Origin: Macrostomum lignano
Lineage: Eukaryota
Assembly: GCA_002269645.1 (NCBI GenBank)
Contig: NIVC01001471.1
Span: forward strand, 62,001-126,000
Direction: 5' to 3'
DNA: 64,000 bases
Below, piece by piece: positions 1-39,348 of this stretch; position 1 is the stretch's first letter; every line of letters begins with the position of its first letter. Under the pieces are notes generated by a model. The model made no database searches. It was given only the letters and a program-made list of their open reading frames with translations, and was not told the origin of the DNA. A program made the translations under genes and the position numbers.

Positions 1-1945
<1,945 letters not shown>

Positions 1946-5600: not shown

Positions 5601-8600
5601 TTTGAAATTGTTCGTGATAATCTCCACATAATCGATTTTTGGTATGATTAAATTTATCTTTTATTTCTTGCAATGAGGGTAAAGCATAGGAATAAAAAAG
5701 TAAACAAGTTTTGGTTTTGTATTAACAGCAGACGTTATTAACATTGAAAGATCCATATTGTGGTAAATTTTTTATTTCATCTCGCATAACACATCTGAAT
5801 GGTTTTATTTTTAATTCGCGTGCCCACCCCATATCTTTGTTTGAAACTATCCTAATTCATTATATGTTACTGAAAAACTATTTGTCTAAGTAAGTTTGGT
5901 AGTTCGGGGTTTTAACAATTCTTTGCGAGTTTTTTCTGCTTGAAGTTGCTTTAATTTAGTTAATTCGCTTTCGTAATTGTTTTTTGCTTTTTGTACTTTG
6001 GAGACATGGAGAAATGAGACAGCGGAGAGGCAGATTCAAGGGCTACTGAGACAGTGGAGAGGCAGATTCAAGGGCTACTGAGATAGTAGAGAGGCAGATT
6101 CAAGGGCTGCTGAGACAGTGGAGAGGCAGATTCAAGGGCTACTGAGATAGTAGAGAGGCAGATTCAAGGGCTGCTGAGATAGTAGAGAGGCAGATTCAAG
6201 GGCTACTGAGATAGTAGAGAGGCAGATTCAAGGGCTGCTGAGACAGTGGAGAGGCAGATTCAAGGGCTACTGAGATAGTGGAGAGGCAGATTCAAGGGCT
6301 GCTGAGACAGTGGAGAGGCAGATTCAAGGGCTGCTGAGACAGTGGAGAGGCAGATTCAAGGGCTGCTGAGACAGTGGAGAGGCAGATTCAAGGGCTACTG
6401 AGATAGTAGAGAGGCAGATTCAAGGGCTGCTGAGACAGTGGAGAGGCAGATTCAAGGGCTGCTGAGACAGTGGAGAGGCAGATTCAATGGCTACTGAGAC
6501 AGTGGAGAGGCAGATTCAAGGGCTACTGAGATAGTAGAGAGGCAGATTCAAGGGCTGCTGAGACAGTGGAGAGGCACATTCAAGGACTGCTGAGACAGTG
6601 GAGAGGCAGATTCAATGTCTACTGAGACAGTGGAGAGGCAGATTCAATGGCTACTGAGACAGTGGAGAGGCAGATTCAATGGCTACTGAGATAGTGGAGA
6701 GGCAGATTCAATGGCTACTGAGACAGTGGAGAGGCAGATTCAATGGCTACTGAGATAGTGGAGATGCAGATTCAATGGCTACTGAGATAGTGGAGAGGCA
6801 GATTCAATGGCTACTGAGATAGTGGAGATGCAGATTCAATGGCTACTGAGATAGTGGAGAGGCAGATTCAATGTCTACTGAGACAGTGGAGAGGCAGATT
6901 CAATGGCTACTGAGATAGTGGAGAGGCAGATTCAAAGAGAGCCAAAGCGGCAGGCTGCATACCTTCTCCATGGAGTCTCCATTGAGCGCCAGGTTGATGA
7001 GCGTGAGCCAGTCCCTGTCCTCGCCAGCGGGCAGCTGCTCCACCAGTTTCTGCCGCTGGTCGCCAGTCAGGCCGGCAGAGGCAGTAGCTGACGCGGCAGC
7101 GGCAGCCTGTTTGGCGCAGTCGTCGAGGCCGCAGCTCAGAGCGGCGTACTCCAGCAAAGTGCACATGAGAGCGGCACCCAGCGACTTAGCCAAATGCTTA
7201 TTAAGCGTAGCCTGCAGATCCGCATCGCCCAGAGCAGCCGCTCCGCGCTCAAACAGTCGCATCTGTTTGACCAGGGCGGCGGCGCGGGCCTGACAGGCGC
7301 CGCTAGCCTGCCGTTTATTAGCCGAATCGGCAGTTAAAACGCTGCCTAATCGACTCTGCAGATTAGAATTCAAAGTCGGCGACAGCAATTCGTAGACAGA
7401 TTCGATCAGCTCATCGCTAACGGAAGACTCGCCGAAGCCGGCCGCTTCTTCCTGCTTCTCTAGGGCTTGTCGAAGCTGGTTGGACACGTCCGAGAGGCTG
7501 ACCGTGACCGAGTCCCGGTCCCTGCCGCTGTCAGTGCCCGCTTCAGACGCTGCCGCCTTGCCGCCGGCTTTGTTGGCAGCCCGGCCAGCGGCGTATTTAT
7601 TTTTAGTGTTCTTCACTTTGATTTCCCGGCCCTGCGTACCGCCGCCCGATTTGATCTTGCCGATCGCTTGGCCGCCGCCTCCGTCATCGTCGGCATCTGT
7701 AGGGTCTAGCTGATGCTGGCGCCGCTGATGCTGCTGCTGCAGCAGGCTGGGATCTGATTTTACTAAAGCTTCGGCTCGCTCGTTTAGAAACTGATCGAAC
7801 GATTGGCACAGATCGGCCAGCCACTTCCTGCTGATGACGTAATGCCCGGCCACCTGAACCAGGTCTGGCCGGGATCCTAGACGGGATAATTGGGGATATT
7901 ATTTATGATTATTCCAGTCTACCTTCACCTGATAACTGATCTATTCCAGAGTCTACCTACCTACACCAGATAACTGATCTATTCCAGAGTCTACCTACCT
8001 ACACCAGATAACTGATCTATTCCAGAGTCTACCTACCTACACCAGATAACTGATCTATTCCAGAGTCTACCTACACCAGATAACTGATCTATTCCAGAGT
8101 CTACCTACACCAGATAACTGATCTATTCCAGAGTCTACTTACACCAGATAACTGATCTATTCCAGAGTCTACCTACACTTGTGTACCCTGATGAAAACGG
8201 TACCTAGACCAAGAGACGTCCAAGAGTCCCTTTAAGTCCCCTTAGAGTCGTTTCAGAGTCATTGCAGGTTACACAGGTAAAATAAGAAAGAAGTGACTCG
8301 AGAGGACTCTAAAACAACGAGATGTCCCGGTACAACTCGCCAAAAAGTCGTCAAAGAGTCAATTTGAGGCGTTTAATTGCCTGCGACCTGAGGCGCTTTT
8401 ATATTGACTTTGGGGCTGTAGAGTCGTATCTGAGGGGCGCTAGAGTCGCTGTAGAATCACTGAGTTACGTCGAAAGCGCATCTGCGTCACTTCATGAATT
8501 AGAATCGCATTTCGCATTTATAACAACTCCATTTAGTCTACTTGAGTGAGTAGAAAGTTAAGCGCTAACACAACGACTCTTGGACGACTTTCGTAACTCC

Positions 8601-11202
8601 TACGATCCTGCAAAGAAAGTCAGAAGAGTCGCCCTTACCCAGCATAGGACTCAGCAGAGCGTCAACATCCGCATCAGTCAGTGGCACTGTAATCGCTTGG
8701 CCAACGTCCAGCCAACGAACGCCGTCTAGAGCGGCCTCTAATCCGGCTGACACATCCGGGCTGACAACGCAGGTCTTGAGCACAATGGGCTCCTGGCCGC
8801 TGTCAGCTAGCAGGCGGCGTAGGTAAGCCTTGGGCTCGGATACTAAACCGCAGCGGCGAACGGCTTCCAGCTCCATGTACTGATTCTGCGCGTAGAATCG
8901 GCGCGCCCAGTCGTCGTGAGCGGCGCTAAACGCGGACGGAACGTACGTGGACTTGCCGCCCTGCGAGTGTATGTGGGGAGGAATAGGAATTGCTGCGCGC
9001 TTGTATGCCTGCTCAGGGGAGTCGGCGGAATGGGCAGTAATGCCTCTTGCCGGTTGTGTGCCTATGTCGCTTAAAGTGCGCCAGGGTGCACACAACCCCC
9101 CTGCCTCTAATAAAAATAGGAATTGCTGGCTGAGCTTTCAACCATCAAAAATTAGATACCAATCCTAAGACATAAGCGCCATTTTGGGTGTCAGAGGCGC
9201 CACATTGGGTGTCAGAGGCGCCATATTGGGTGTCAGAGGCGCCATATTGGGTGTCAGAGGTGGCGCTTCGGGACTGGGGCAATCAGATGCGCAGATTTGA
9301 GCGGTAAGGTCGTAAAATAACTAAATCAGTAGTTTTACTACTTACTAAAGTAGCGTATCTTACAATTGAGTAGCAGGCATCCTAGCCGTAGGGATCAGCT
9401 CATAATTTCGTATTTTATGAATCCAAAGGTAGAGACAGTATCCAGAATAAGAATTTTAATTGGCTGCATTCATGCGCATCAATAAATTAGGATGCAGTTA
9501 ATTATCGGCTTCGTTTGATCTAAAAAAACACGCAAAAATACGTGCATATATAACGGTATGCATCAGAGACAATAATAACTAGATGGGTCATGGGCACTTG
9601 GCTTGGTAAAACTGTCTCGCTCGCTACTTTCAGTTCAGTAGCAAGGAAGAATGTGTAAGGTATTTTATAAAAATATGTACATTAGCCAGCGCCACTGGAA
9701 ATGTACATGACAGGCAGCTATAGGGATTAGGCTGAAACACTGAGGAAGGCAATAAATGAGTCTTGTATTAAAATACATTAACATGCCTCTATTATTTCTA
9801 CTGAACTGACAGTAGTTTACACGCAACTAATTTAGTATCCAATATTTAATATCTGCTGTGCCGAAGCCCGCTCCGCGATATCACTAATTGGACGCCATAG
9901 CATGATCGACGAGAAAGATTTTGTTATACAATATAAAAAACACAAAAACGCTTACTTAGAAAGAAACAAGATCTGTGCGTTTTAATCCTCAGCACTGAGT
10001 ACGAACATGAATGCTTTAAAGCATCTAGACCTTTTATCTAAAGACCGATACAACCTGAGCATACTCAACAAAAGCCCTTGAGCAAGCACGCTGAAGAAAA
10101 GTCAAGCAATTGTTATCTATCGAGCTCTTTGGCCTGTATTTAACTAATTTACCTGGAGCCCCCATAAATTCCATTGTAGCTTTTACGATTAAATCCTCAA
10201 AAATTCCTCTAGCCTTCACAGTCCTGAGAAATCTAGCCTTCCCAGTCCTGAGCAATTCCTCTCTAGCCTTCACAGTCCTGAGAAATTCCCCTCTAGCCTT
10301 CCCAGTCCTGAGCAATTTCCCTCTAACCTTCACAGTCCTGAGCAATCCTCCTCTAATCTTTACAGTCATGAGTGATTCCAAAGACCCCCAGCGTTCGTTT
10401 TACAGTCACAAGCTATTCAGTCTGAAAATTCATAATCCAGTACAATTTCCCGTTAAACCTGAAACCATAGTCTGAGTTTCATCTTTGATCAAAAAAGCAA
10501 TCGAACCTGAAATGCTCCTCGCAATTCTCCAGCCGAGTGCAACTCGTCCAGAACAGTTCTTAACAGTTTCTCTGGCATTCGCAGCTGACTGGCAGCCTGT
10601 TGAACAGTCAACGGCCTGATTGCCGCATTGAAACAGCCGCGCATTCTGGCCCGGTGCCGACGCAAATAGCGATCGGTGAACAGCGCGTCATCCTCCTGGC
10701 TGCCCTGAATCACCGTGCCAGTGTACTGTCGCACAATCGACGTTAAAGTCTGCGTTGGCAAGCCGTGCAATTTAGTTAATTCGCCCAGCGTTACGTGACC
10801 ACGTTCGTAGAGAGCCTCATTAATTTCGTGAGCAACCCGACGAAAATAGACTTCGTGCATTAGCTCGCCATTAACTAGGTGCAACTCTGGGTCGGATTTG
10901 ACCAGTTCGCGAACTCTCTGCTCCACAGTGCCCAGGTCGATGTTCAAAGCCTCCTGCAAGGCGACAACATTGACTCGATGCTGGTGCAGCTCCAGCTCTT
11001 CGCGAATCTCTTTAGCCAACTCGGCTTCCGTTAGGAAAGCTTTACCGTCGCAGGTGTACACTAGTTTAATAAGGCCCATTTGGCTTAGTCGCTGCACAAT
11101 TTCTATACAGTTTCGTTCTGTCAGACGCTGTTTAGCGCTAGCCAGTTGAACTCGTTGCAGGTCGGCGGCGAGGCCGCGAATTTCGTCCCAGGTGGCTGAC
11201 AT
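2664..11202 (-). CDS. UFL1: E3 UFM1-protein ligase 1, about 779 aa. Exons 11202-10507, 8960-8639, 7876-6963, 3071-2664.
   Basis: N-terminus MSATWDEIRGLAADLQRVQLASAKQRLTERNCIEIV matches the UFL1 family start (WEEIRRLAADFQRAQ...QRLSERNCIEIV). The middle has GGTQGREIKVK and the C-terminus has PVHAPGRAVPQLINYL. All three introns are GT-AG with compatible phases 0, 1, 0, and the exons sum to 2340 nt, a multiple of 3. Confidence 0.95.
3118..3219. repeat. Left remnant (about 3 units) of the 32-bp minisatellite GAGACAGTGGAGAGGCAGATTCAAGGGCTACT in UFL1 intron 3
   Basis: Same unit as the 6015-6935 array. It ends abruptly at 3219, where unrelated AT-rich DNA starts. Confidence 0.9.
3220..6010. mobile_element. 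Decayed, truncated Polinton/Maverick-like (virus-like DNA element) fragment interrupting the 32-bp array
   Basis: Starts exactly with AGTAGT at the array breakpoint, a typical Polinton terminus. A second related terminus copy starts at 3677. The DNA is AT-rich and holds a broken ORF with phage-tail-fibre-like repeats. No right TIR, integrase or polB was seen. Confidence 0.55.
4900..5459 (-). pseudogene. Frameshifted ORF with 19-aa repeats (DSYSK[TA]E[IV]xxxLNLKRxxT) followed by DMNSNRIIN and VDKNYVD; tail-fibre/Polinton accessory-protein-like
   Basis: Manual translation of 5320-4940 gives ETDSYTKTEI..TADSYSKTEINNSLNLKRNTTDSYSKAEVDSAVNLKRDITDSYCRTDSDSRYVQNTATRTVDMNSNRIIN, then after a frameshift VVDKNYVDTEIGTRSGNINMNN. 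It has in-frame stops and frameshifts. Confidence 0.6.
6015..6935. repeat. 32-bp minisatellite, about 28 copies, in UFL1 intron 3
   Basis: Tandem GAGACAGTGGAGAGGCAGATTCAAGGGCT[AG]CT units. Confidence 0.97.
7930..8180. repeat. 36-40 bp minisatellite (GATAACTGATCTATTCCAGAGTCTACCTACACCA) in UFL1 intron 2
   Basis: About 7 tandem units visible. Confidence 0.93.
9178..9262. repeat. 21-bp tandem repeat (TTGGGTGTCAGAGGCGCCA[CT]A), 4 copies
   Basis: Directly visible in UFL1 intron 1. Confidence 0.9.
10205..10365. repeat. About 36-bp tandem repeat (CTCTAGCCTTC[AC]CAGTCCTGAG...) in UFL1 intron 1
   Basis: 4-5 units. They explain the shadow ORFs 10034-10381 and 10110-10475. Confidence 0.88.
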
Positions 11203-11740: not shown

Positions 11741-14505
11741 AAATGGAATGAGAAACTTACATCCATGCTGATATAAGTGATGATCAGGAGATGGAATGAG
11801 AAACTTACATTCATGCTGATATAAGTGATGATCAGGAGATGGAATGAGAAACTTACATCCATGCTGATATAAGTGATGATCAGGAGATGGAATGAGAAAC
11901 TTACATTCATGCTGATATAAGTGATGATCAGGAGATGGAATGAGAAACTTACATTCATGCTGATATAAGTGATGATCAGGAGATGGAATGAGAAACTTAC
12001 ATTCATGCTGATATAAGTGATGATCAGGAGATGGAATGAGAAACTTACATTCATGCTGATATAAGTGATGATCAGGAGATGGAATGAGAAACTTACATTC
12101 ATGCTGATATAAGTGATGATCAGGAGATGGAATGAGAAACTTACATTCATGCTGATATAAGTGATGATCAGGAGATGGAATGAGAAACTTACATTCATGC
12201 TGATATAAGTGATGATCAGGAGATGGAATGAGAAACTTACATTCATGCTGATATAAGTGATGATTAGAGATGGAATGAGAAACTTACATCCATGCTGATA
12301 TAAGTGATGATTAGAGATGGAATGAGAAACTTACATCCATGCTGATATAAGTGATGATTAGAGATGGAATGAGAAACTTACATCCATGCTGATATAAGTG
12401 ATGATTAGAGATGGAATGAGAAACTTACATCCATGCTGATATAAGTGATGATTAGAGATGGAATGAGAAACTTACATCCATGCTGATATAAGTGATGATC
12501 AGGAGATGGAATGAGAAACTTACATCCATGCTGATATAAGTGATGAACAGGAGATGGAATGAGAAACTTACATCCATGCTGATATAAGTGATGATCAGGA
12601 GATGGAATGAGAAACTTACATCCATGCTGATATAAGTGATGATCAGGAGATGGAATGAGAAACTTACATCCATGCTGATATAAGTGATGAACAGGAGATG
12701 GAATGAGAAACTTACATCCATGCTGATATAAGTGATGATCAGGAGATGGAATGAGAAACTTACATCCATGCTGATATAAGTGATGATCAGGAGATGGAAT
12801 GAGAAACTTACATCCATGCTGATATAAGTGATGATCAGGAGATGGAATGAGAAACTTACATCCATGCTGATATAAGTGATGATCAGGAGATGGAATGAGA
12901 AACTTACATCCATGCTGATATAAGTGATGATCAGGAGATGGAATGAGAAACTTACATTCATGCTGATATAAGTGATGATCAGGAGATGGAATGAGAAACT
13001 TACATCCATGCTGATATAAGTGATGATCAGGAGATGGAATGAGAAACTTACATCCATGCTGATATAAGTGATGATTAGAGATGGAATGAGAAACTTACAT
13101 CCATGCTGATATAAGTGATGATTAGAGATGGAATGAGAAACTTACATCCATGCTGATATAAGTGATGATTAGAGATGGAATGAGAAACTTACATCCATGC
13201 TGATATAAGTGATGATCAGGAGATGGAATGAGAAACTTACATCCATGCTGATATAAGTGATGATCAGGAGATGGAATGAGAAACTTACATCCATGCTGAT
13301 ATAAGTGATGATTAGAGATGGAATGAGAAACTTACATCCATGCTGATATAAGTGATGATCAGGAGATGGAATGAGAAACTTACATCCATGCTGATATAAG
13401 TGATGATTAGAGATGGAATGAGAAACTTACATCCATGCTGATATAAGTGATGATTAGAGATGGAATGAGGAACTTACATCCATGCTGATATAAGTGATGA
13501 TTAGAGGTGGAATGAGAAACTTACATCCATGCTGATATAAGTGATGATTAGAGATGGAATGAGAAACTTACATCCATGCTGATATAAGTGATGATTAGAG
13601 ATGGAATGAGAAACTTACATCCATGCTGATATAAGTGATGATTAGAGATGGAATGAGAAACTTACATCCATGCTGATATAAGTGATGATCAGGAGATGGG
13701 ATGAGAAACTTACATCCATGCTGATATAAGTGATGATTAGAGATGGAATGAGAAACTTACATCCATGCTGATATAAGTGATGATTAGAGATGGAATGAGA
13801 AACTTACATCCATGCTGATATAAGTGATGATCAGGAGATGGATGAGAAACTTACATCCATGCTGATATAAGTGATGATTAGAGATGGAATGAGAAACTTA
13901 CATCCATGCTGATATAAGTGATGATTAGAGATGGAATGAGAAACTTACATCCATGCTGATATAAGTGATGATCAGGAGATGGGATGAGAAACTTACATCC
14001 ATGCTGATATAAGTGATGATCAGGAGATGGGATGAGAAACTTACATCCATGCTGATATAAGTGATGATCAGGAGATGGGATGAGAAACTTACATCCATGC
14101 TGATATAAGTGATGATTAGAGATGGAATGAGAAACTTACATCCATGCTGATATAAGTGATGATCAGGAGATGGAATGAGAAACTTACATCCATGCTGATA
14201 TAAGTGATGATCAGGAGATGGGATGAGAAACTTACATCCATGCTGATATAAGTGATGATCAGGAGATGGGATGAGAAACTTACATCCATGCTGATATAAG
14301 TGATGATTAGAGATGGAATGAGAAACTTACATCCATGCTGATATAAGTGATGATCAGGAGATGGAATGAGAAACTTACATCCATGCTGATATAAGTGATG
14401 ATTAGAGATGGAATGAGAAACTTACATCCATGCTGATATAAGTGATGATCAGGATGGAATGAGAAACTTACATCCATGCTGATATACTCGTAAGTGATGA
14501 ACAGG
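11741..14505. repeat. 47/48-bp satellite (AGATGGAATGAGAAACTTACATCCATGCTGATATAAGTGATGATCAGG), about 57 copies
   Basis: Highly homogeneous array. The 48-bp (GATCAGG) and 47-bp (GATTAG) variants occur in blocks. Confidence 0.98.
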
Positions 14506-15016
14506 AGAAAGTTTCGTGCACATCCCCGATCCCACAATATGGCCGGAGTACATAAGGCTTAATTTACAACAAAAAATACTACGCTCGTAAAAAAACCTGT
14601 CCCGGTGCGTGACAAAACTAGAGAGGAAGATTGAGACAAACCCCAATCAAACTTAAAGCTCTAACTGCCAACAAACCTGTGCTAATCATCTACCGAGTTC
14701 CTGCTAAATTACTTTCTCAAAAAAATGAAACGAACAGAATCGATAAATAATTCCAAAGACAAAAAATCAACAGCGACACTAGGAAGGGCCGGGTTATACC
14801 AGTGCGCTATTCCGACATTATCGGCGCTCTCAGATATATTTGCTTAGAAATTCTCTAAACAGCATATAAACTGTAACGAAGCGCGTCATTGCGCTCAAGC
14901 ATTGGCGTCGAAAATAGCGATACCTGGCAGAAAAAAGAGTGCCTGGTTGGCTTATCTAGACCATGAACTCGTGCAGAACGCAGTGTCCATCAGCGTCTGG
15001 TGCCAGAGTGTTCTCT

Positions 15017-15094
15017 TTACTTGCTTCTTTCCCTCATCTTCCTGCGCTTGCGTTTTAGCCGCCTCATACGCTTCTTGCGCCACTTGGCTCGCAT
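15017..15094 (-). CDS. RPL41: Ribosomal protein eL41 (RPL41), copy a, 25 aa MRAKWRKKRMRRLKRKRRKMRERSK
   Basis: Hand translation from ATG at 15094 to TAA at 15017 gives the canonical eL41 sequence pattern. A strong acceptor TTTTTTGCAG lies 6 nt upstream of the ATG. The ORF is too short for the ORF track. Confidence 0.96.
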   Translation of the reverse strand: MRAKWRKKRMRRLKRKRRKMRERSK

Positions 15095-15281
15095 TTAGAA
15101 CTGCAAAAAAGACAGACAATGGGTGACGCAAATTGAAAAGGAATAGTTTTGACTGCTATCTATGAAACTAACGGATTAGCCTAGAAAAACCTTCGTGCAC
15201 ACGTGTTAGGACGAACAAAAGGGGACGAAATTAAGAGGGACATTTAGCTGCTTCAAATTGCTTACTAATTTGACTTTAGGG

Positions 15282-15627
15282 CAGGGGTCGGTAAACTTTT
15301 TTTTAACTCAAGGGCCAGATAGAGAACCTAGCGCAAGACTGCGGGCCAGAGGAGGGAAGAGAGGAGAGGCAACACAGAAGAGCGATAGAAGGAGACGCAA
15401 TGGAATAAAGGAAAAGAGAGGAGAGACGAAATAGGAGACGAAAGAAGAGAGGAGAGGGGAGCGGAGAGGAGAGAAGAGGAGAGAATAGAGGAAAAGAGAA
15501 AAGAGAGCTGAGAAGAGACAAACCTTGAGCGGTCCAGATTACTAATAGTGAATTTTCAAAGGACCCGAGGGTCTGATAGAGGCTATGCGGGCCGCAATGT
15601 GGGGATCAGCAAGAAGCCGAATACCTG
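15282..15627 (+). mobile_element. hAT-type MITE with internal GA-rich tract, copy 1
   Basis: Starts CAGGGGTCGGTAAACTTT and ends GCCGAATACCTG. Its internal segments (CTAGCGCAAGACTGCG; TTTCAAAGGACCCGAGGG) match the copies at 40983 and 47176. No clear TSD. Confidence 0.75.
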
Positions 15628-16137
15628 TGCAAACTTAGTTAAGCTGCTGAATATTGGAGAAAGGCGATATCTTTAGCTAGTATAAACCGGTGATTAGTGT
15701 TTTGGGGATTTGGTTAGTCAAGGAAGTCAAGTCAAGGAAGCAGTTAAAACCTCCCATAAATGCCTAATAATAGCGCAAAGATTTTCGCAGGTTAAATACA
15801 ATCGTGAGCAGCTTACTTGCATAATTAGATGGAAATATATAGACTATTTAGTAAACTAAAACAGTGCATTAATTTTAAAGCTGAATGCTCAACTTAGAAA
15901 ATTCTACACTACGTTCGACAGTTAAAATAATAGCATGTGCAAGTTGGGGCAAATCGGGTAGATTAGATCATTTCAAGTGGCTTCAGACTGTCTGGTTTGA
16001 AAACTAACGACGCAATTAAGGTTAAAAAGCTTTTTATTTTTTAGCTTCAGAAAATAGGGTGCAGACGTGCAGTATAAGACTGTCCACGTCGTTTTTGGCG
16101 ATATAATTTATAGATACATATTAGCTGTCTTGGTGAG

Positions 16138-16260
16138 CGCAAAGCGCATGCGCCTTTTCAAATCCATTCCTTAGAACGCAGATTGCTCTTGACCTGCTTA
16201 GCCATGTTTGGGCAGAAAAATCAAGAATCCCTGAACCAACGAGCGCATGCAAGCAGTGAG
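16138..16260. promoter_or_regulatory. Candidate bidirectional promoter between RPL41a (-) and orphan membrane gene 1 (+)
   Basis: Perfect NRF1-type palindrome GCGCATGCGC at 16144-16153, a YY1-like GCCATGTT at about 16201, and a second GCGCATGC at about 16242. The flanking genes diverge from this region. Confidence 0.4.
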
Positions 16261-16451
16261 CAGTGAGCACACCCTAAGAAACCGAGTGTACAATACTGCC
16301 AAATGACTAAGTGACGAATAGAGATAACGAATTAGGCTCGAGAACAATTTCTTAAGCCTAGATAAAAGCAGGTGCCACATGCACGAGATTGCTACGACTG
16401 CTTACACGCGCCGTTGAGCTTTTCAGCTGCAGGTTACATATTAGCGAAGCA

Positions 16452-17546
16452 ATGTGGCTTCGACTCGCTGTATTATTGCTATGCATGAAAGCTGCTCTGT
16501 CGACAGCAAACGAGCACGGCCTGCGACCTCTAGACAATGCTAGATGCTGGTGCGACTTTGAAAGTATGGCGACAGAATTGCAAGATCTTAATAAGCCAGA
16601 TAGCAACCATGCGGAACAAGTCTTCAGCTTTGTAAACACGCTAATCTCGCTCAACTTTAAACTGACGAATTACTTCACGGACTTCCGTCAGTGCGTCAGA
16701 CACTGGTTAGACAGCATTGGCCAGTGTCAGGCTAAGTGCTCGTGCCGAAAGGATACGGTCTGTTGCCGGGACAATGTCTTTGGTACTCTAGACAAAGGCA
16801 TATTAACACTAAAGAAACAGGTAAAGCAGTCATTTACAGCTTATTCGCACATACCATTTTTAAATGACTATCACGGCGCAACATTCGACATCGTAAATGT
16901 ATACTCTGGCGCTTTCTTCGAATTCCTGACGGCACTGAAGACGGAAAGGACTAAAGCGGAGAATGAAATTGCGCATTTTTCTGCCTTCTACAGGCGCATG
17001 GAAAAGGGAAAACCCTTGGATTCGATTTTTGCGATAACAATGCAGGGCAAAAATGGATCGAAATCAATAGTAACACGATTGGCTGATTTCTATGAATGCG
17101 ATACAACTCTAGTGTTACCATTCTACCGGAATGTTTACGGAGTAGTGCTCCAATTTCTAATGATGCGCGAGCTACACTCAGAGCTACACGCACCGCAAGG
17201 TAGCAGTCCAATTAGCCAGTTCAGCAGCGAGCCGGAATGGAAACACTATCTGAGACTGTCGGACAGCATGACAAAGAAGATAATCTATTGCAGCAGTAAA
17301 GAAATTTATCAGATCAGATCTCAAGAAATAAAAGACAAAGACATGGCGATGCGAAACGCAGCAATCGTGTTTAGTTGCTTCATACTGGCGCTAGTTATAA
17401 TCATTGCTTTAATAGTATTCTTCGCGTGCAGGTCCAAGGCGGAAACTACCGTGACTATGCGCGAAGAACCTATCGGAAGATCCTACGAGGGTCAGGGTTA
17501 CGGACATGACGCCCTAATGAAGCGCTACTACGAAACAGACGCGTAA
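16452..17546 (+). CDS. Orphan single-pass type I membrane protein 1, 364 aa, intronless
   Basis: First ATG at 16452. Signal-peptide-like MWLRLAVLLLCMKAALSTA, a Cys-containing helical ectodomain, TM segment AAIVFSCFILALVIIIALIVFFAC, and a short Tyr-rich tail ending YYETDA. Confidence 0.85.
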   Translation: MWLRLAVLLLCMKAALSTANEHGLRPLDNARCWCDFESMATELQDLNKPDSNHAEQVFSFVNTLISLNFKLTNYFTDFRQCVRHWLDSIGQCQAKCSCRKDTVCCRDNVFGTLDKGILTLKKQVKQSFTAYSHIPFLNDYHGATFDIVNVYSGAFFEFLTALKTERTKAENEIAHFSAFYRRMEKGKPLDSIFAITMQGKNGSKSIVTRLADFYECDTTLVLPFYRNVYGVVLQFLMMRELHSELHAPQGSSPISQFSSEPEWKHYLRLSDSMTKKIIYCSSKEIYQIRSQEIKDKDMAMRNAAIVFSCFILALVIIIALIVFFACRSKAETTVTMREEPIGRSYEGQGYGHDALMKRYYETDA

Positions 17547-18787
17547 CTGCTAACACGTATGAGCCAATGTCTTGTTTGCAAAAAAATGTTCCTAAGCTTC
17601 TGAACTAATGACTGTCGTGTAATAACATTAAATGTTTGCAGACTCAACTAGTAAACCTATGATCGCCATCTGAAGTAATCGTTTAATTTGTAAAACTGCA
17701 GCATAATCTTACTGGCATTCTTAGCATTCCTGAATGTAAATAGACGCTAAAAGAAACGCTATTTAAACTGGCAAGATCATTGTAATTCACACTATTCTGC
17801 AAGAAACTCGTGAGGTCCCTCTTTAGCATTGTAACCCTCAAACGTAATTTGCCATAGTTTTATGAATGAATAGAGCAACTATGCATGTAAAGTATGCAGA
17901 ACTTTAAGAGCTTTAGTTTACCATATTTTCTGTCAAGAGCTTAATTAATCAACCGTAAGTGTAACTAAATTTAATTTACTTCTTTTTGAAAGAAAACACT
18001 TTTGAGCCAGGAAAATTTAGTTTATTCACTAATGTTTGTGCACAGAAACATTTTTTTTTCTAAAATATACACTGTTACTGCTTATTTCTATTTTGAAATG
18101 CCAGATTACTTTGGCAACAAACTGGGGCAGAAGCTTGCGCTTTAAATATTTTGTGTCAATCTTAGTCTAATCCCTTATGAAAGTAATTAAGCCACCGTAT
18201 TCTAATTGCAGTAAGGAATAAGAATAAATACAATATGTGCAATGTACATCATACTTACTAGACATCATACGAACTAGATTAGAAGTTCTTAACAGTGGCA
18301 TCCTAACAATCATTGAAATGACCCCCTGCGCTAGGCTAGTGGCACCATATATTGCTTATAGAACTGCTTAAACTTAAACGACTCGTAACTTGTTATTGTC
18401 CTCATCCTTATCAACATTCACAAAACTGCAGGTACTTTAACACTTGGAGTTAACATAAAGCTCATAGTTAGGGACTGAAGCACTGTGAAGGCACTAAAAA
18501 CCAGCAAAGCACACAAGTTTAGAGCTATTTGGCTAGCACAAACGTGTTATAGAACTTCCTGCCAAAAGGCTGAAGGTAAGGTGTGGGTGTCTTAACTACT
18601 AAGCCTAGCGACGGAGTGGGCTCTTACCAATAAACAAACAGTCGATGTGGTAAGAGAAGTGACAGACTATACCTATAAAATTAAGCTGGTTAAGTATCAA
18701 AGCATGGCTAATTCTTAGACAGAGACAAAAGCCGCCGCATGGGCCAGAAAGAAAATTAGCGCCTAGCAAATGCTTTCTACAGCAAAC

Positions 18788-20041
18788 ATGAGACCCGAAG
18801 TGGTCCTTTGCGCTGCACTGCTGCTAACAGCATGCACTGGTTTAGAAGCCGAGTGCAGGTGTAAATTTGCGCAACTCAAGCTCCAATTGAATACGATGCA
18901 CGCTACAGAGTCATCGGACTTCGAAAAGATCAGCAGCTTCATGGAAGGCCTGACAATACTCGACGATGTTCTGTTCACCAACGGAGGAAGTTTTGTCGGG
19001 TATTGTGACCGAATTAGCAGTTGCAATGCATCGATACTGCATGACCTGCTTGATGTAAATCTGCAACTGCTGACATCGGCTGGAAGATCGGCACTGGCGC
19101 ACCTGCCGCAACTCAGCGTAGCTGTCAAAATAATCGAGTCGAATTTTTATTACTTTGACAACTATATCAAAGAACTGGCCAGGCTTAGGCCTGGACATAC
19201 CGAGTTTCAGTTCGAATTTAAGCAAGAACAAGAGAGGCTACATAACGCAATGAAATCGGTGTGCTTTGTGAGCAATCGGACAAGCGAAAATGCTAATCAG
19301 TAAGAAGCCAGTTACAATCTGCATTTTAAAAATTTGTGAACCAACAAAGCAAACAGAAACGGGATGAAGGGGGAGGTGAAAGACAATATAGAATGTATGT
19401 AAAATTCAGGTTCCCTAGAGTTCCTATCTTTGTAAGCCTTATATATGGTAAAGTCTTATCTCTTAGCTTCTAAAAGCCCAAATCTAAAAAAACAAATATA
19501 GAAATTTAAACCAAACTTTACTACTGGTAGTAAGTAGTCAATTATTAAGCACATTATTAAGTCTGTTAAAACCTCACATAACTAAACTATTTACAGACCA
19601 ACTCCGGAACTAAGTGAGATCGTGCGACAGACCCGATGCGAGCCGCAAGATTATCTACCCATATGCTTCAAGCTGCACAGTGCAGCTCTACAATTCCTAC
19701 TGATGCTACAATCGTACTCTGATCTATCAAGTATTAACCCTAAACACTGGAGCAACGTACAAGAGTTTGCCTACTACAACAATTTCAGACATAAATTAAT
19801 TGGCTCGATCGACTACTGCCGAACAAAGCGGGTGAAAACGGTGGTGAAAAGTGAAAGTCAATCTAAATTAGAGTTCCAACTAACCGGTATAGTCAGCTTC
19901 TCAATTGTGCTGCTAATCATAATTCTAGCTGTCGCTCTGGCGATTTGGATGGCAACAAACAGACAACGGACTAATCGAGCAGGCTTTGATCGTGTGGTTA
20001 CCAACTCCGAAGGCTACCACTATGAAACTGGTTTCGTATGA
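18788..20041 (+). CDS. Orphan single-pass type I membrane protein 2, about 318 aa, paralog of the 16452 gene. Exons 18788-19299 and 19597-20041.
   Basis: Signal-like MRPEVVLCAALLLTACTGLEA. A phase-2 intron (CA|GTAAGA ... TTACAG|A) joins the two ORFs in frame. TM segment GIVSFSIVLLIIILAVALAIWMA; tail ends YHYETGFV. Shares motifs with gene 1. Confidence 0.82.
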
Positions 20042-20571
20042 CGATAGCAATTAAACCTTCCCCCACCTGCGGAATTGTTTCATAACCTCGATATTTTTGT
20101 ATATTTTTGCAAGCAAAAATATTTAAAGAATCTCGAAAATTTTCCTAAACAAATGTACCACTATGTATGTACAGCATAATAGTCTCGTTGTTTTACAAAC
20201 ATAGTGAATAAGATGCGGAACTAAAGGTGGAGGATAAAATGAATGTACTCAAAACGAATGTACCAGATACTGTTTTCTAACCTCTCACCTACCGTAGAGA
20301 GCTACAAAATCTCTATAACAGCTACTTATGCTAATAAAAAGTAATTGGAACACAGAAGTCTTTTTATCCAAACCACTGCACTAAATATATTTTTATTAAT
20401 CATTAACATGTACTCACACATACAGATATACAAACTGATGCAGTACAACTAATTAACACACTCCAAAAACGAAGGTGGAGGCAATCTTGCAAATGGCATT
20501 CAATTCGACGTAGGAGCTGCCCCAGCTGCATTGGCATTAGATTACAGCCTGTAAGAGCGAGCTCAAACAAT

Positions 20572-20649
20572 CTACTTGCTCCTTTCTCTCATCTTCCTGC
20601 GCTTGCGCTTCAGCCTGCGCATCCTCTTCTTACGCCACTTTGCGCGCAT
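20572..20649 (-). CDS. RPL41: Ribosomal protein eL41 (RPL41), copy b, same 25-aa protein
   Basis: ATG at 20649 to TAG at 20572 translates to MRAKWRKKRMRRLKRKRRKMRERSK. Acceptor TTTTTTTTAATTTCAG lies 4 nt upstream of the ATG. Confidence 0.96.
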   Translation of the reverse strand: MRAKWRKKRMRRLKRKRRKMRERSK

Positions 20650-21043
20650 TGCGCTGAAATTAAAAAAAATTCTGGGAGTAAATTATGACATCAAATTATG
20701 AATGAAAAGGCTGACTGAGTTACTGTACAAGATGCGAGTCTTTTGAAAAATAAAAGTTATTTTATATGGGTTGAGTGTGATACTTAAAACAATTGGCGAG
20801 ATATTCTGACAGGCTTTTGACTGATGCTGGCGCCCTGGACCTAACTGGGGGTGTGACTTTCTGAGGCCTATGGCCCAGAGACGCGCTCTCTGACTTCTCC
20901 CCCTCTTTCTGGCCACTGTGTGGCTGGCGGGTGAAGTACTTTGTTGTTGTTGTTGCTGTTTTAAAACGATTTTGTTTAGTTAAAAGTGACAGTTTAGGGT
21001 TGGGTGCTGTGTAAGCTATGGCACAAAATAAGGGTTGAAATGA

Positions 21044-28297: not shown

Positions 28298-31200
28298 ATG
28301 GCTACCTTTGACTTAACAGATATAACTGCAAACCTGCCATCAGTTCAGTTTGAAAGTGCATTAACAGAGGAGCAGTATGCTGAAAACTATCTGCGAAATA
28401 AATGCCACAGTCTTTTATACAATGCCTGCGCACAATCTGTATATTTTGTGTCCTCACTTAACGAATTCAGGTATGCGTATGTCATTCTCGAACAGAGTTT
28501 AAATAGGAAGCCTTTGAATTTATTCAGACATTTAATATTTTATCCATGTTTTTTACTTTGTGAAACTTCAATTTTTTCAGGATAAACTTGTCTTTTACTC
28601 TGATTAGTGACTACATGCCTGCTAATAATACTATATTAACATAGGCAGCAAGTTATGCATATTGTACTAGGCATAAGTGCGATGCTTTAAATACATTTTT
28701 TATCCAAACTGCTCAACTGAATGACATATTAAAGTCCCATTTTTTCGCAACTTTTTAGGTTGTGGTTAAAAAACTCGATAACAAATATCTAGTTAACAGT
28801 GCGAAAAGCTATTCCATAGTTCACTATGTCTTATATATATTTTATTAATTTTTAACAACTTAACGCTTTTAGTTATAGTTGAAGTAGTGAGGTATTTTAC
28901 ATTTTTTTGCACAAGCTCCACACAACGTCCAAAATAATTTTTTTCCAATGTCTCATTTGCTTTTTTGTCAAATTATGGCCCTGTGTGTTTCTAGTCTTTA
29001 AAAGCATTCTATGAAATAAAACTTAATCCATCCTAAAAAATACAGGTATTTTGGAATTTAATTTAGTAAAATCAAAATCTTTAGTTCAAAAAGACATTGC
29101 TGCAATTGCCAGAGCACTGGGAACAGGGAGGTTGCAAGAGAGGGCAGCTGCCACCAGGCATTGAGATGGGGCACTGCTCCCTTCTGGAATTTGAGATCAT
29201 TTCTTAACCGCAAAATAGGAGCCAACCAGGGGAGTTCAAGAGGGCCAGATGTTCCGTAGTGAAAATGGGGTCCTTTTCCTGGATAAATCTTGTTTGCAGC
29301 GCAAAGTTAACGTCAAATGTAACTAAAATCAGTGGGACTCTTTCCCGTCGGGCAAGAAATGTTTCGTGGTGCCTGTATGGCAAAAACGAATAGTTCAAAT
29401 CGATACAATATTTTTATTAGTCACCAGCAGCCCGAGCTATAACTCGCATTTTCCCACGCGCAGGGAGAACCGCCTGTTGGTGCTGCACCCGAACGATAAG
29501 AAGCTCTCCAACAAACTGCTGAAAGACATGCAGGCCAAGGAGCCGCTGCTGGTTGGCATCATCGGATTCGGACGGCTGGGCTCTCGGCTGGCCAACTTTC
29601 TGGTGCGCGGTTCAGGCCTAATGCCGCAGGAATTGAAGATCTCCACGAGAAGGCCTGAGCTGGCTTGTGAGTTCTACGTTGAACAAGGATTTTCTAGTAG
29701 CAGTGACTATTTTACTTTTGCGTAGCTTTGGATATCTTTAAGTAGCTCTGAGTAGTCTGTGAGTTAACTGTAGCTTAGTCCGTAACTTTTTGTAGCGTTG
29801 AGTAGCTTTGCGTAGCTTTTTCCATGACCTGAGACGCTTAGTCCGTGAGCGGAGTAGCTTAGTTCGTGAGTTAAGTAGCTTAGTCCGTGAGTTGAGTAGC
29901 TTAGTCCGTGAGTTGAGTAGCTTAGTCCGTGAGTTGAGTAGCTTAGTCCGTGAGTTGAGCAGCTTAGTCCGTGAGTTGAGTAGTTTAGTCCGCGAGCTGA
30001 GTAGCTTAGTCCGTGAGCTGAGCTAGAATATTCATTCCCTCCTTCTGGTATCAGAAATGTGTCAGAATGGTGCTATGGGGAGGGCTGCAAAGCTGCAAGA
30101 CATCATAGAGTACGCTTTCACTATCGCTTTGCAGCGGACCTGACTGCCAGAGGCTGTATCTGCGTGTTTGACAACGCCAAAGTTGCCTCCTCTGTTCACC
30201 TGCTGTTTCTGTGCTGCCCTCCGGCCGCGCTGCCCAGCGTAGCCGATGAAATTCGCGACCACCTGTCGCCTAGGACCATTGTGTACTCGTATGTGACCGG
30301 CTACAGGTGAGCAACGCTCCATCTGTGTTGGTACAGAGTGATGGAAAATCTAGAAATGAGATGTCTCTGTGGATCTTAATCTCAACTAATAAAGTATGCA
30401 AATTTGCTTCAAGTTCTACTAACAGTCATATAAAGCGTGAAGTAACGTTTTCGTTACATTTTACCGCTTGAAGGGAGAGAAAACTACGCCAACTACTGGA
30501 CCACGAGGCCCTGATTTGTCCGGCCTTCAGCTGCCGGCCGGCCCTCGCTTCCGTCTGGCCAATGTCGGCCGAAATGGTCGACCTGATGATGCGGCCAGCC
30601 ACCGCTCTGGCCGCCTGTCCAGTGGCGCCTCCAGCCAGCTCCCAGGATGAAGAAGACTGCGATAACGAGGTGCGTCTGATTTCGCACTCGGGGTGTTAGG
30701 AGTTTTTAGAGTCTGAGGCGCTAATTAAGCGCCTCAGAGGTGCTTGAGGTGCATTTCGTGTCAGATCATGGACAACTGATGCAGAATGACGCTCACTCGA
30801 CTTTCTTAGAAATAAGCTGGAAGCCGGCAAGTAACGGATATTTGTCGTATCGTTCTGGACAGAATTCGTCTGTGGCGCAACCCCATTCAGCGCTATGCAT
30901 TCTCCAGATCATACTAAAAGCACTGTCGATAGGACACATCTACATTCCTTACATCACTCAGCTCATTTATAAGAAAACCATGTGCAGCGTCCTTCTGCTT
31001 CCGCTGTCTATGTGTCTTGACTTACTTGACTTAGCTGCAGGGCTGTCCCGAAGGGGACACAGCGGGAAGGCTCGGGCGCCCATTCCGCTAGTCCCTGAAC
31101 GGCCGACGCGTCGCTATGGACGGAGGGTTGGCGCCGCCCAGGGAGGTCCCCCAGTGTCGCCAGCAGCTATGGTGCTCTCTGGAAAGGAGAGTTCAGCCCT

Positions 31201-38586: not shown

Positions 38587-38887
38587 CTGTCGGTTTTTTT
38601 ATTTTTTATCTTAACTGCATCCAAATTACGCTACTAATAGTAAACCAGTTTGATATTCATTCTTATTTTTATTGGAGCTGTTTTACGTTTCGTGCGTTGC
38701 ACAAAGTACGAGTTGAAATTTCAAGTAAGCAGAATTTTTTGTAAGTAAACCACCCAAATCGCTTTTTTCAGTTAAAAGTTTCTCTTTTAGAACACGTCAA
38801 GTCTTCTGTTTAATTTTAAAACTTGTATCTCAGAATATAGCACTAACTGTGTAGGAAATCCAAAAGTGTAGTTTTCAAGTAAACAGC

Positions 38888-39348
38888 AGTCCCGAATCCC
38901 CAGTCCCGAATCCCCAGTCCCGAATCCCCAGTCCCGAATCCCCGGTCCCGAATCCCCTGTCCCGAATCCCCGGTCCCGAATCCCCAGTCCCGAATCCCCA
39001 GTCCCGAATCCCCGGTCCTGAATCCCCAGTCCCGAATCCCCAGTCCCGAATCCCCAGTCCCGAATCCCCAGTCCCGAATCCCCAGTCCCGAATCCCCAGT
39101 CCCGAATCCCCAGTCCCGAATCCCCAGTCCCGAATCCCCAGTCCCGAATCCCCAGTCCCGAATCCCCAGTCCCGAATCCCCTGTCCCGAATCCCCAGTCC
39201 CGAATCCCCAGTCCCGAATCCCCAGTCCCGAATCCCCAGTCCCGAATCCTCGATCCCAAATCCTCGATCCCAAATCCTCGATCCCAAATCCTCGATCCCA
39301 AATCCTCGATCCAAAATCCTAGATCCCAAATCCTCGATCCCAAATCCT
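38888..39348. repeat. 14-bp minisatellite CCCGAATCCCCAGT grading into CCCAAATCCTCGAT, between NOXRED1 and TTC6
   Basis: Directly visible. Confidence 0.96.

What the first reader, a model, noticed from the sequence alone, without database searches (positions are those of the whole stretch)
16452..20041. Tandem pair of highly diverged orphan cell-surface proteins defining an unrecognised family
Seen in sequence: both + strand genes encode signal peptide, helical Cys-containing ectodomain, one TM helix and a short tail. They align by eye despite low identity: ARCWCDFESMATELQDLNKPDSNHAEQVFSFVNTLISL vs AECRCKFAQLKLQLNTMHATESSDFEKISSFMEGLTIL; LPFYRNVYGVVLQFLMM vs LPICFKLHSAALQFLLM; IIYCSSK vs IDYCRTK; and C-terminal YYETDA vs YHYETGFV. 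One is intronless, the other has one intron. I recognise no domain. Inference: this is an old, fast-evolving lineage-specific receptor, adhesion or recognition family with a conserved tail YET motif (possibly phospho-Tyr, sorting or PDZ-type). The LPxY...LxxL helix loosely recalls the central helix of Cry delta-endotoxin N-terminal-like folds, but that is only a visual resemblance.
Basis: partly seen in the sequence, partly recalled or inferred. Interest (0 to 1): 0.72.

Follow-up and report, generated by a model that had tools for sequence, protein, structure and literature searches.

The report
Orphan flatworm membrane-protein gene pair
Two neighbouring genes of the flatworm Macrostomum lignano are real, transcribed, anciently diverged paralogues. 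They encode single-pass membrane proteins with a helical, disulfide-braced outer domain and have no detectable relatives outside this species, which is common in this genome, and their function is still unknown.

Summary
The window is Macrostomum lignano contig NIVC01001471.1. Gene A (16452-17546, intronless, 364 aa) and gene B (18770-19299 + 19597-20041, one GT..AG intron, 324 aa) are true paralogues: BLASTP E=2e-9, and ectodomain shuffle Z=12.7. Each has an N-terminal hydrophobic signal-like segment, one strong TM helix, six invariant cysteines and a short tail ending [YH]-Y-E-[ST].

Both genes match GenBank gene models that were built only from RNA-seq transcripts, so transcription and the splice are supported. 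A third paralogue, Mlig025998, is 59% identical to A and sits at another locus. The A+B pair is duplicated at about 99% identity on a sister contig.

No relative turned up outside M. lignano. I searched Pfam, PDB sequences, a 5.8-billion-protein index (down to E<=10), an exhaustive HMMER scan of 1.84 billion representatives, and viral and metagenome contigs. AlphaFold models were poor (pLDDT about 44), so the fold comparison says nothing. The Cry-toxin resemblance is unsupported.

Function is inferred only: probably a plasma-membrane recognition, receptor or accessory protein. About 44.5% of M. lignano genes are Macrostomum-specific, so an orphan family here is not surprising. Interest is low to moderate. 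In passing, two unannotated 25-aa ribosomal protein eL41 genes bracket the pair on the opposite strand.

The parts
16452..17546 (+). Gene A (Mlig015559 copy): intronless CDS, 364 aa plus stop; type I membrane protein
   Evidence: ORF; translation. Identical to the C-terminal 364 aa of the transcript-derived GenBank model P0004, which spans 16374-17546.
16452..16508 (+). Gene A predicted signal peptide (aa 1-19, MWLRLAVLLLCMKAALSTA, small residues at -3/-1)
   Evidence: Read directly from the sequence. An N-terminal hydrophobic segment is found in the same place in paralogues A2 and B. Inferred; no dedicated predictor was available.
16509..17357 (+). Gene A ectodomain (aa 20-302): all-helical, 10 Cys of which 6 are invariant in the family (C32, C34, C92, C98, C216, C280), one NGS sequon. 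Includes a Cys-rich insert at aa 89-112 that is missing from B.
   Evidence: Alignments; Cys and sequon positions; AF2 secondary structure, at low confidence.
17358..17429 (+). Gene A transmembrane helix (aa 303-326, AAIVFSCFILALVIIIALIVFFAC)
   Evidence: Kyte-Doolittle 19-residue peak of 3.41. It is the only part of the AF2 model with pLDDT 70-83.
17430..17543 (+). Gene A cytoplasmic tail (aa 327-364), starting RSK and ending KRYYETDA. The Y-E-T motif lies at 17529-17537.
   Evidence: The motif [YH]-Y-E-[ST] occurs in all three paralogues. Tail similarity alone is not significant.
18770..19299 (+). Gene B (Mlig004256g1) exon 1: signal peptide and the N-terminal two-thirds of the ectodomain. 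An alternative ATG lies at 18788.
   Evidence: The spliced product equals P0003 exactly.
19300..19596 (+). Gene B intron, 297 nt, starts GTAAG and ends TTTACAG, phase 2
   Evidence: Sequence; in-frame join. It is the same intron as in the transcript-derived GenBank model and is conserved in the sister copy B'.
19597..20041 (+). Gene B exon 2: the LP...LQFLLM helix, a stalk containing RTKR, the TM helix (19886-19954, aa 274-296), and a tail ending GYHYETGFV plus stop
   Evidence: (Kyte-Doolittle peak 3.23).

Best explanation
A and B are two anciently diverged paralogues of a small gene family found so far only in Macrostomum lignano. The family has three paralogues (A = Mlig015559, A2 = Mlig025998, B = Mlig004256), each present in 2-3 near-identical copies.

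Shown:
- Both genes are transcribed and intact.
- Each encodes a protein with an N-terminal hydrophobic signal-like segment, a 250-280-aa ectodomain, one 23-24-residue TM helix, and a 28-38-aa basic-start tail ending [YH]-Y-E-[ST]-x(1-3).
- Six cysteines are invariant, and every member has an even number of ectodomain cysteines.

Inferred:
- The proteins are type I membrane glycoproteins.
- The ectodomain is a helical bundle. Conserved hydrophobic residues at 3-4 spacing form the core, and three conserved disulfides brace it, plus two extra in A/A2 and one extra in B.
- The long TM and the lack of ER-retrieval or lysosomal motifs point to the plasma membrane.
- There the ectodomain would bind a partner (a ligand, another cell, or a co-receptor in cis), and the conserved juxtamembrane/TM segment and the C-terminal Y-E-S/T motif would couple to intracellular adaptors or kinases.

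The biological process they serve is unknown.
For: - Paralogy.
- Transcript-based gene models identical to my translations. The GenBank annotation of this assembly was built only from RNA-seq transcripts (StringTie/TACO/TransDecoder; PMC5730564).
- Third paralogue and duplicate copies.
- Intact duplicate pair with the same intron.
- Long-term constraint in the A lineage: pN 0.28 against a saturated pS of 0.85; A vs A' shows 2 nonsynonymous and 5 synonymous changes.
- Topology: one N-terminal hydrophobic segment, one TM with Kyte-Doolittle mean above 3.2, sequons only in the ectodomain, and ectodomain Cys counts of 10, 10 and 8.
- Invariant residues are mainly Cys, Leu and Phe at heptad-like spacing, for example F60, L64, L67, L71 and F78.
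- Both AF2 runs predict only helices in the ectodomain, and the helices are colinear in the alignment, with 84% agreement.
- Between A and A2, the strongest conservation lies in helix 53-88 (75%), the LP helix (77%), the stalk (74%) and the juxtamembrane/TM segment (72%). The signal peptide (35%) and tail (42%) are least conserved.
- No YxxPhi motif occurs in any tail.
Against: - No experimental or expression datum could be retrieved. The gene IDs were absent from every supplementary table held, and two further papers had no supplements held.
- Both AF2 models have pLDDT of about 44, so the bundle packing and disulfide pairing are not established.
- The tail motif is not statistically supported on its own.
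- Signal-peptide cleavage and plasma-membrane residence are inferred, not tested.
- B vs B' shows 5 nonsynonymous against 2 synonymous changes, so B could be under relaxed constraint.
Confidence: 0.6

Rival explanations
1. Same architecture, but the proteins live in an internal or specialised secretory compartment rather than on the general cell surface. Examples are sperm or egg membranes, or the membranes of rhabdite, gland or adhesive-organ granules. They would act in a reproduction-related or lineage-specific cell type.
For: Macrostomum-specific genes are mildly enriched among germline genes: 48-54% against 44.5% overall (PMC5816591). Rapid turnover of reproduction-related genes is documented in this genus (PMC7336406 abstract; PMC10468722). 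B shows more nonsynonymous than synonymous differences between its recent copies.
Against: No expression data were found for these genes. The tails lack canonical sorting motifs. The A lineage is clearly constrained.
Confidence: 0.25
2. The genes are domesticated or degenerate envelope-like (class I fusion TM-subunit-like) genes of a retroelement or virus. The expected layout would be hydrophobic N-terminus, long helix, Cys loop, second helix, TM, short tail.
For: The layout looks superficially similar. A and A2 carry a C-x5-CC motif after a predicted 36-residue helix. A LINE and a Ty3/gypsy-like element lie in the same window.
Against: The spacing is CX5CC rather than CX6CC, and B lacks the motif entirely. 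There is no surface subunit. A and A2 have no furin site, and no fusion peptide can be told apart from the signal peptide. The retroelements lie more than 11 kb away, and the nearer one is on the other strand. A scan of 2.9 million viral contigs found no relative. The pair sits next to housekeeping genes (UFL1, eL41) in both copies.
Confidence: 0.03
3. The ORFs are non-functional: spurious TransDecoder calls on antisense or intronic transcription of the eL41 locus, or decaying pseudogenes.
For: The pair lies between two eL41 genes on the opposite strand. On the sister contig it lies inside the intron of an annotated minus-strand model. In that contig B' has no plus-strand model.
Against: ORFs of 364, 375 and 324 aa remain intact in every copy, although synonymous sites between paralogues are saturated. 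Six Cys and the hydrophobic core are conserved across 21%-identical paralogues. B has a canonical spliced intron conserved in both copies. A vs A2 gives pN much lower than pS.
Confidence: 0.03
4. The ectodomain is a pore-forming, toxin-like helical domain (Cry N-terminal-like or ClyA/Cry6-like).
For: The top Foldseek rows for the B model are Cry6Aa chains, at E=0.12-0.43.
Against: Those matches have TM-scores of 0.09-0.12 and rmsd of 26 A on a pLDDT-44 model, so they are noise from long helices. Pfam gives no Endotoxin_N or any other hit at E<=1. A C-terminal membrane anchor and a cytoplasmic tail do not fit a soluble pore-former.
Confidence: 0.01

Closest known systems
Macrostomum-specific 'hypothetical proteins' (taxonomically restricted genes of M. 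lignano; PMC5816591)
   Same: No homologue in human, planarian or schistosome. Known only from transcript-derived models. Present in multiple near-identical copies because of the recent genome duplication.
   Different: Here the orphan is a small, anciently diversified family of three paralogues with saturated dS, a clear membrane-protein architecture and conserved cysteines. It is not a single short ORF.
Small helical-ectodomain type I membrane proteins (RAMPs; the four-helix-bundle part of IZUMO1/SPACA6/TMEM95). This is an analogy of architecture recalled from general knowledge, not a tested relationship.
   Same: Signal peptide, disulfide-stabilised alpha-helical ectodomain, single TM, short tail. 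These proteins act by binding a partner protein rather than by catalysis.
   Different: No sequence similarity was detected. The ectodomain is two to three times larger than a RAMP. There is no Ig-like or beta-hairpin module and no CXXC motif as in the IZUMO/SPACA6/TMEM95 proteins. The fold is not established.
LRRNT cysteine cap of leucine-rich-repeat proteins
   Same: The insert in A and A2, C-x3-C-x-C-x4-V-C-C (aa 92-105), mimics the LRRNT pattern C-x3-C-x-C-x4-V-x-C. The only PDB sequence hits are lamprey VLR N-terminal caps (E=1-1.8). AF2 draws a small beta-hairpin there.
   Different: E-values are at chance level. No leucine-rich repeats follow. Pfam shows no LRRNT hit. The insert is largely absent from B.

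Membership tests
Generic type I single-pass membrane glycoprotein | N-terminal cleavable signal peptide | tested here: inconclusive
   A hydrophobic N-terminal segment with small residues at -3/-1 is present in all three paralogues. No dedicated predictor or experiment was available.
Generic type I single-pass membrane glycoprotein | Exactly one TM helix near the C-terminus, with basic residues on the cytoplasmic side | tested here: met
   One segment per protein has a 19-residue Kyte-Doolittle mean of 3.2-3.4. It is followed by RSK (A), KTNR (A2) or TNRQRTNR (B).
Generic type I single-pass membrane glycoprotein | Ectodomain hallmarks: N-glycosylation sequons and paired cysteines only on the lumenal side | tested here: met
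   Sequons occur only in the ectodomain (1 in A, 3 in A2, 2 in B). Ectodomain Cys counts are even (10, 10, 8), and six are invariant.
Taxonomically restricted (orphan) gene family | No detectable homologue outside the lineage | tested here: met
   Only M. lignano proteins were found in the 5.8-billion-protein index (ectodomain profile down to E<=10). The same held for the exhaustive HMMER scan of 1.84 billion representatives, Pfam, PDB sequences, viral contigs and metagenome contigs. Other Macrostomum genomes and transcriptomes could not be searched.
Three-domain Cry delta-endotoxin, N-terminal helical domain | Match to the Endotoxin_N profile, and a seven-helix bundle followed by domains II and III | tested here: not met
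   Pfam gives no hit at E<=1. The protein ends in a TM helix and short tail with no beta domains.
Retroviral/filoviral class I fusion TM subunit | CX6CC loop between two heptad-repeat helices, preceded by a furin site and a fusion peptide; encoded within a retroelement or virus | tested here: not met
   A and A2 carry CX5CC only, and B has none. A and A2 have no R-x-K/R-R site. There are no flanking LTRs or pol genes and no viral-contig relative.
IZUMO1/SPACA6/TMEM95 sperm fusion-related superfamily | Four-helix bundle with a CXXC motif, plus an Ig-like or beta-hairpin module before the TM | tested here: not met
   No CxxC occurs in any paralogue. No beta module is predicted. Pfam shows no hit. 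The fold-level comparison was not informative because model confidence was low.
LRRNT-capped LRR proteins | Four-Cys cap followed by leucine-rich repeats | tested here: not met
   A cap-like Cys pattern is present only in A and A2. No LRRs follow, and Pfam shows no hit.

The most novel reading that the evidence does not exclude
The family is a previously undescribed disulfide-braced helical ectodomain fold. It would serve as a Macrostomum-lineage cell-surface recognition system, for example in sperm-egg or sperm-recipient interaction or in another fast-turnover reproductive interface of these hermaphrodites. The A-type and B-type paralogues would act as a cis-heteromeric pair, and the C-terminal Y-E-S/T motif would be the signalling or trafficking switch.
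Probability: 0.12. Interest if true: 0.55.

Novelty: new variant of a known kind. Interest (0 to 1): 0.25.

Why it matters
If characterised, the family would add a new ectodomain type to the list of single-pass receptors. It would also give M. lignano, a transgenic and RNAi-tractable flatworm model, a handle on a lineage-specific cell-surface function.

For now its value is mainly in annotation. It is a clean, transcript-supported three-paralogue orphan family with a defined architecture. It also shows that the locus holds two missed eL41 genes and one probable mis-called ORF. Because nearly half of this genome's genes are lineage-restricted, the orphan status alone is not remarkable.

Tried and rejected
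- **Pfam.** Scans of A and B gave only sub-threshold TM-driven noise (FixQ, Pox_A14; E of about 0.05).
- **Protein searches.** I also ran an exhaustive profile HMMER scan. All returned the family itself only.
- **PDB sequence search.** It returned only chance-level LRRNT-cap matches.
- **AlphaFold2.** A with a 3-sequence alignment and B with a 6-sequence alignment both gave pLDDT of about 44. The test of whether the two structures superpose could therefore not be run meaningfully; I compared secondary structure only.
- **Foldseek against PDB.** Both models gave best E of 0.12-0.14 and TM of about 0.11. The hits were generic long-helix proteins, including BAR domains, spectrin and ClyA/Cry6-type toxins. 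I rejected these as noise.
- **Internal duplication.** hhalign of the N half against the C half of the ectodomain gave probability 0.1%.
- **Extra family members in the window.** tblastn found none.
- **B-like partner at the A2 locus.** None lies within +/-10 kb.
- **Viral and metagenome contig scans.** No relatives.
- **LTR- or TIR-like repeats flanking the pair.** None were found. The only flanking repeat proved to be two eL41 coding sequences.
- **Expression data.** The gene IDs appear in no paper's text and in no held supplement of six papers. Two further papers hold no supplements.
- **Tail motifs.** There is no YxxPhi motif and no shared PDZ class (C-termini). An acidic di-leucine is seen by eye only in A2 (ENRDLL; sequence). 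A 14-3-3 mode III reading (pT-x1-2-COOH) fits A and A2 but not B, so I did not adopt it.
Full report
**Source and coordinates.** A 21-kb locus fetched from GenBank assembly GCA_002269645.1 (Macrostomum lignano Mlig_3_7, contig NIVC01001471.1) is 100% identical to window 8770-30041. The window is therefore a piece of the genome of this free-living flatworm.

Gene A is a single ORF from ATG 16452 to stop 17546 and encodes 364 aa. Gene B has two exons, 18770-19299 and 19597-20041, separated by a 297-nt phase-2 intron that starts GTAAG and ends TTTACAG. It encodes 324 aa, or 318 aa from the second ATG at 18788. The spliced B translation equals GenBank protein PAA67602.1 (BOX15_Mlig004256g1) exactly. 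A equals the last 364 residues of the 390-aa annotated model at 16374-17546.

**Is the resemblance real?** Yes.
- BLASTP of A against B gives E=2e-9, with 21% identity over 305 residues.
- To exclude hydrophobic-segment bias I aligned the ectodomains alone. The local scores are 99 (A-B) and 112 (A2-B), against 33-35 +/- 5-6 for 1000 shuffles (Z=12.7 and 13.3, none of 1000 as high).
- The N-terminal and C-terminal halves are each significant on their own (Z=7.5 and 9.7).
- The cytoplasmic tails by themselves are not significantly similar (Z=0.2 and 2.0).

**Are they real genes?** The GenBank annotation of this assembly was made solely from RNA-seq-derived transcripts. The pipeline used StringTie/TACO models plus a de novo transcriptome, boundaries from trans-splice and poly(A) reads, and ORFs from TransDecoder (PMC5730564). 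Models identical to my translations therefore mean that transcripts exist and that the 19300-19596 intron is spliced.

The 390-aa '5'-partial' model of A starts at 16374, two or three bases after an AG (aaaagcag|gt). That fits a 5' end set by a trans-splice acceptor, though this is an inference.

**Family size and history.** Searches found only M. lignano proteins.
- A has a 99% copy, P0001 (Mlig015559g2), on contig NIVC01001966.1.
- A 59% paralogue, here called A2 (Mlig025998), has three copies that differ by one residue each.
- B matches only itself.

The sister contig carries the whole A'+B' pair next to the same UFL1 gene. B' is 99.3% identical in DNA, has the same intron borders and an intact frame, yet has no plus-strand model. 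The A2 locus has no B-like gene within 10 kb.

Nei-Gojobori counts:
- A vs A': 5 synonymous and 2 nonsynonymous changes.
- B vs B': 2 synonymous and 5 nonsynonymous changes. Both of these counts are tiny.
- A vs A2: pS 0.85 (saturated) against pN 0.28.
- A vs B: both saturated.

The three paralogues are therefore old. The 99% copies reflect the recent genome duplication of this species. The A lineage has been under purifying selection, and B may be less constrained.

**Architecture.** Each protein has a hydrophobic N-terminus and one very hydrophobic segment near the C-terminus. The 19-residue Kyte-Doolittle means of that segment are 3.41, 3.34 and 3.23, and it spans 23-24 residues. Basic residues follow it.
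- N-x-S/T sequons occur only between these two segments.
- Six cysteines are invariant (A numbering C32, C34, C92, C98, C216, C280). Ectodomain cysteine counts are even in all three proteins (10, 10, 8), as expected for full disulfide pairing outside the cytosol.
- Most other invariant residues are Leu or Phe at 3-4 spacing, for example F60, L64, L67, L71 and F78.
- Both AlphaFold2 runs predict helices only, apart from a tiny hairpin in the Cys-rich insert of A. The helices are colinear in the A/B alignment, with 84% agreement.
- Between A and A2 the best-conserved blocks are helix 53-88 (75%), the LP...LQFL helix (77%), the stalk (74%) and the juxtamembrane/TM segment (72%). The signal peptide (35%) and tail (42%) are least conserved.
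- All three tails end [YH]-Y-E-[ST] followed by 2, 4 or 3 residues.
- No tail has a YxxPhi motif. The last three residues (-TDA, -ETV, -GFV) do not share one PDZ-ligand class.
- B alone has an R-T-K-R site in the stalk. The chance expectation is about 0.1 per protein by my estimate, so I give it no weight.

**Search for relatives and folds.** Nothing was found outside the family.
- Pfam gave nothing above noise.
- PDB sequences gave only E of about 1 matches between the A/A2 Cys-rich insert and lamprey VLR N-terminal caps.
- The exhaustive HMMER scan of 1.84 billion representatives returned only the family. So did the ectodomain-only profile at E<=10.
- Viral and metagenome contigs held no relative.
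- hhalign found no internal repeat.
- AF2 confidence was poor (mean pLDDT 44.9 and 43.8). The Foldseek results carry no information: best E 0.12-0.14 and TM-score about 0.11, against BAR domains, spectrin repeats, designed bundles and ClyA/Cry6-type long-helix toxins.

The Cry-like idea is unsupported.

**How it most likely works.**

Shown: a transcribed, constrained, three-member family of proteins with an N-terminal hydrophobic leader, a Cys-bearing ectodomain predicted (at low confidence) to be all-helical, one long TM helix and a short tail.

Inferred:
- The topology is type I, and the ectodomain is a helical bundle braced by three conserved disulfides.
- The proteins travel by default to the plasma membrane. 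The 23-24-residue TM is typical of post-Golgi proteins (general knowledge), and the tails show no lysosomal YxxPhi motif and, by eye, no C-terminal KKxx.
- The ectodomain binds a partner. The conserved juxtamembrane/TM block and the terminal Y-E-S/T motif couple to cytoplasmic factors.

I put about 0.85 on the architecture and about 0.3 on the surface receptor, recognition or accessory role, and I report 0.6 for the composite. The main rival (0.25) is the same protein acting in a specialised reproductive or secretory-cell membrane. It is motivated by the mild enrichment of Macrostomum-specific genes in the germline (PMC5816591). Envelope-derived, artefact and pore-former readings are each at or below 0.03.

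**Novelty and interest.** The family has no name, no Pfam entry and no homologue, so it is undescribed. But 44.5% of M. lignano genes are classed as Macrostomum-specific (PMC5816591). No other macrostomorph turned up in any of the searches, and I could not search other Macrostomum genomes or transcriptomes. The orphan status therefore partly reflects sampling and homology-detection limits. I found no expression or phenotype data. I rate it a new variant of a familiar kind, a single-pass membrane glycoprotein family, with interest 0.25.

**Seen in passing.** A 78-nt direct repeat flanks the pair, at 15018-15095 and 20573-20650, with 85% DNA identity. It is the coding sequence of two minus-strand genes for the 25-aa ribosomal protein eL41. 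Both encode [25 protein letters not shown] (Pfam Ribosomal_L41, E=2.8e-11, full length). All nucleotide differences between them are synonymous. Each ATG lies 4-6 nt downstream of a polypyrimidine-AG acceptor.

Neither eL41 gene is annotated. On the sister contig a 50-aa minus-strand CDS is annotated instead. It overlaps eL41 out of frame, and its intron contains A' and B'. This is probably an ORF mis-call on an eL41 transcript.

Noticed in passing
window 15017-15094 (-) and 20572-20649 (-): Two unannotated 25-aa ribosomal protein eL41 (RPL41) genes bracket the A-B pair on the opposite strand. Their peptides are identical, their DNA is 85% identical, and all differences are synonymous. Each ATG sits 4-6 nt after a polypyrimidine-AG acceptor.
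   Followed up: yes
L003 8565-14055 (-), equivalent to window about 14952-20421: GenBank annotates a 50-aa minus-strand CDS whose last exon overlaps eL41 out of frame and whose 5.3-kb intron contains A' and B'. This is probably a TransDecoder mis-call on an eL41 transcript. It suggests that the pair is nested in, or lies between cistrons of, an antisense eL41 transcription unit.
   Followed up: partly
window 16725-16766 (A aa 92-105) and the same segment of P0002: The Cys-rich insert C-x3-C-x-C-x4-V-C-C mimics an LRRNT cap. The only PDB sequence hits are lamprey VLR caps, at E=1-1.8. No LRRs follow, and the insert is largely absent from B.
   Followed up: partly
window 19823-19834 (B aa 252-255, RTKR): A furin-type R-x-K-R site lies in the stalk of B only, about 20 residues before the TM and just after the conserved Cys. 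It could allow ectodomain shedding, or it could be chance.
   Followed up: no
window 11743-14486: A 48-bp tandem array with 57.7 copies and 97% matches lies between the UFL1 gene and eL41a. It produces long spurious ORFs on the minus strand.
   Followed up: no
window 6900-11202 (-): Exons of the E3 UFM1-protein ligase UFL1 gene (Pfam E3_UFM1_ligase E=3e-72; UFL1 E=5e-18). A 32-bp x 29 tandem repeat sits at 6015-6935. The same gene neighbours the duplicate pair on the sister contig.
   Followed up: partly
window 1379-1912 (-): The first coding exon of a beta-tubulin-like gene (Pfam Tubulin E=2.6e-51) lies next to a 24-bp tandem array at 596-1238.
   Followed up: no
window 31114-34854 (-), with 35174-36457 (-): A LINE-type retrotransposon with an intact 1246-aa ORF (endonuclease, reverse transcriptase, RNase H). 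The upstream 427-aa ORF has no Pfam match.
   Followed up: no
window 50245-54338 (+): A Ty3/gypsy-like LTR-retrotransposon gag-pol region split over four consecutive ORFs, with RT, RNase H, integrase zinc-binding and integrase core domains.
   Followed up: no
window about 28298-30041 (+): The annotated gene downstream of the pair has an F420_oxidored (PF03807) domain, the NADP oxidoreductase family that includes pyrroline-5-carboxylate reductase. This comes from the locus table only.
   Followed up: no
window 37531-38366, 38887-39348, 45379-46614, 58001-58803, 62235-63239: Several long GC-rich or simple minisatellite arrays with periods of 13-18 bp generate many overlapping artefactual ORFs in all frames.
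   Followed up: no
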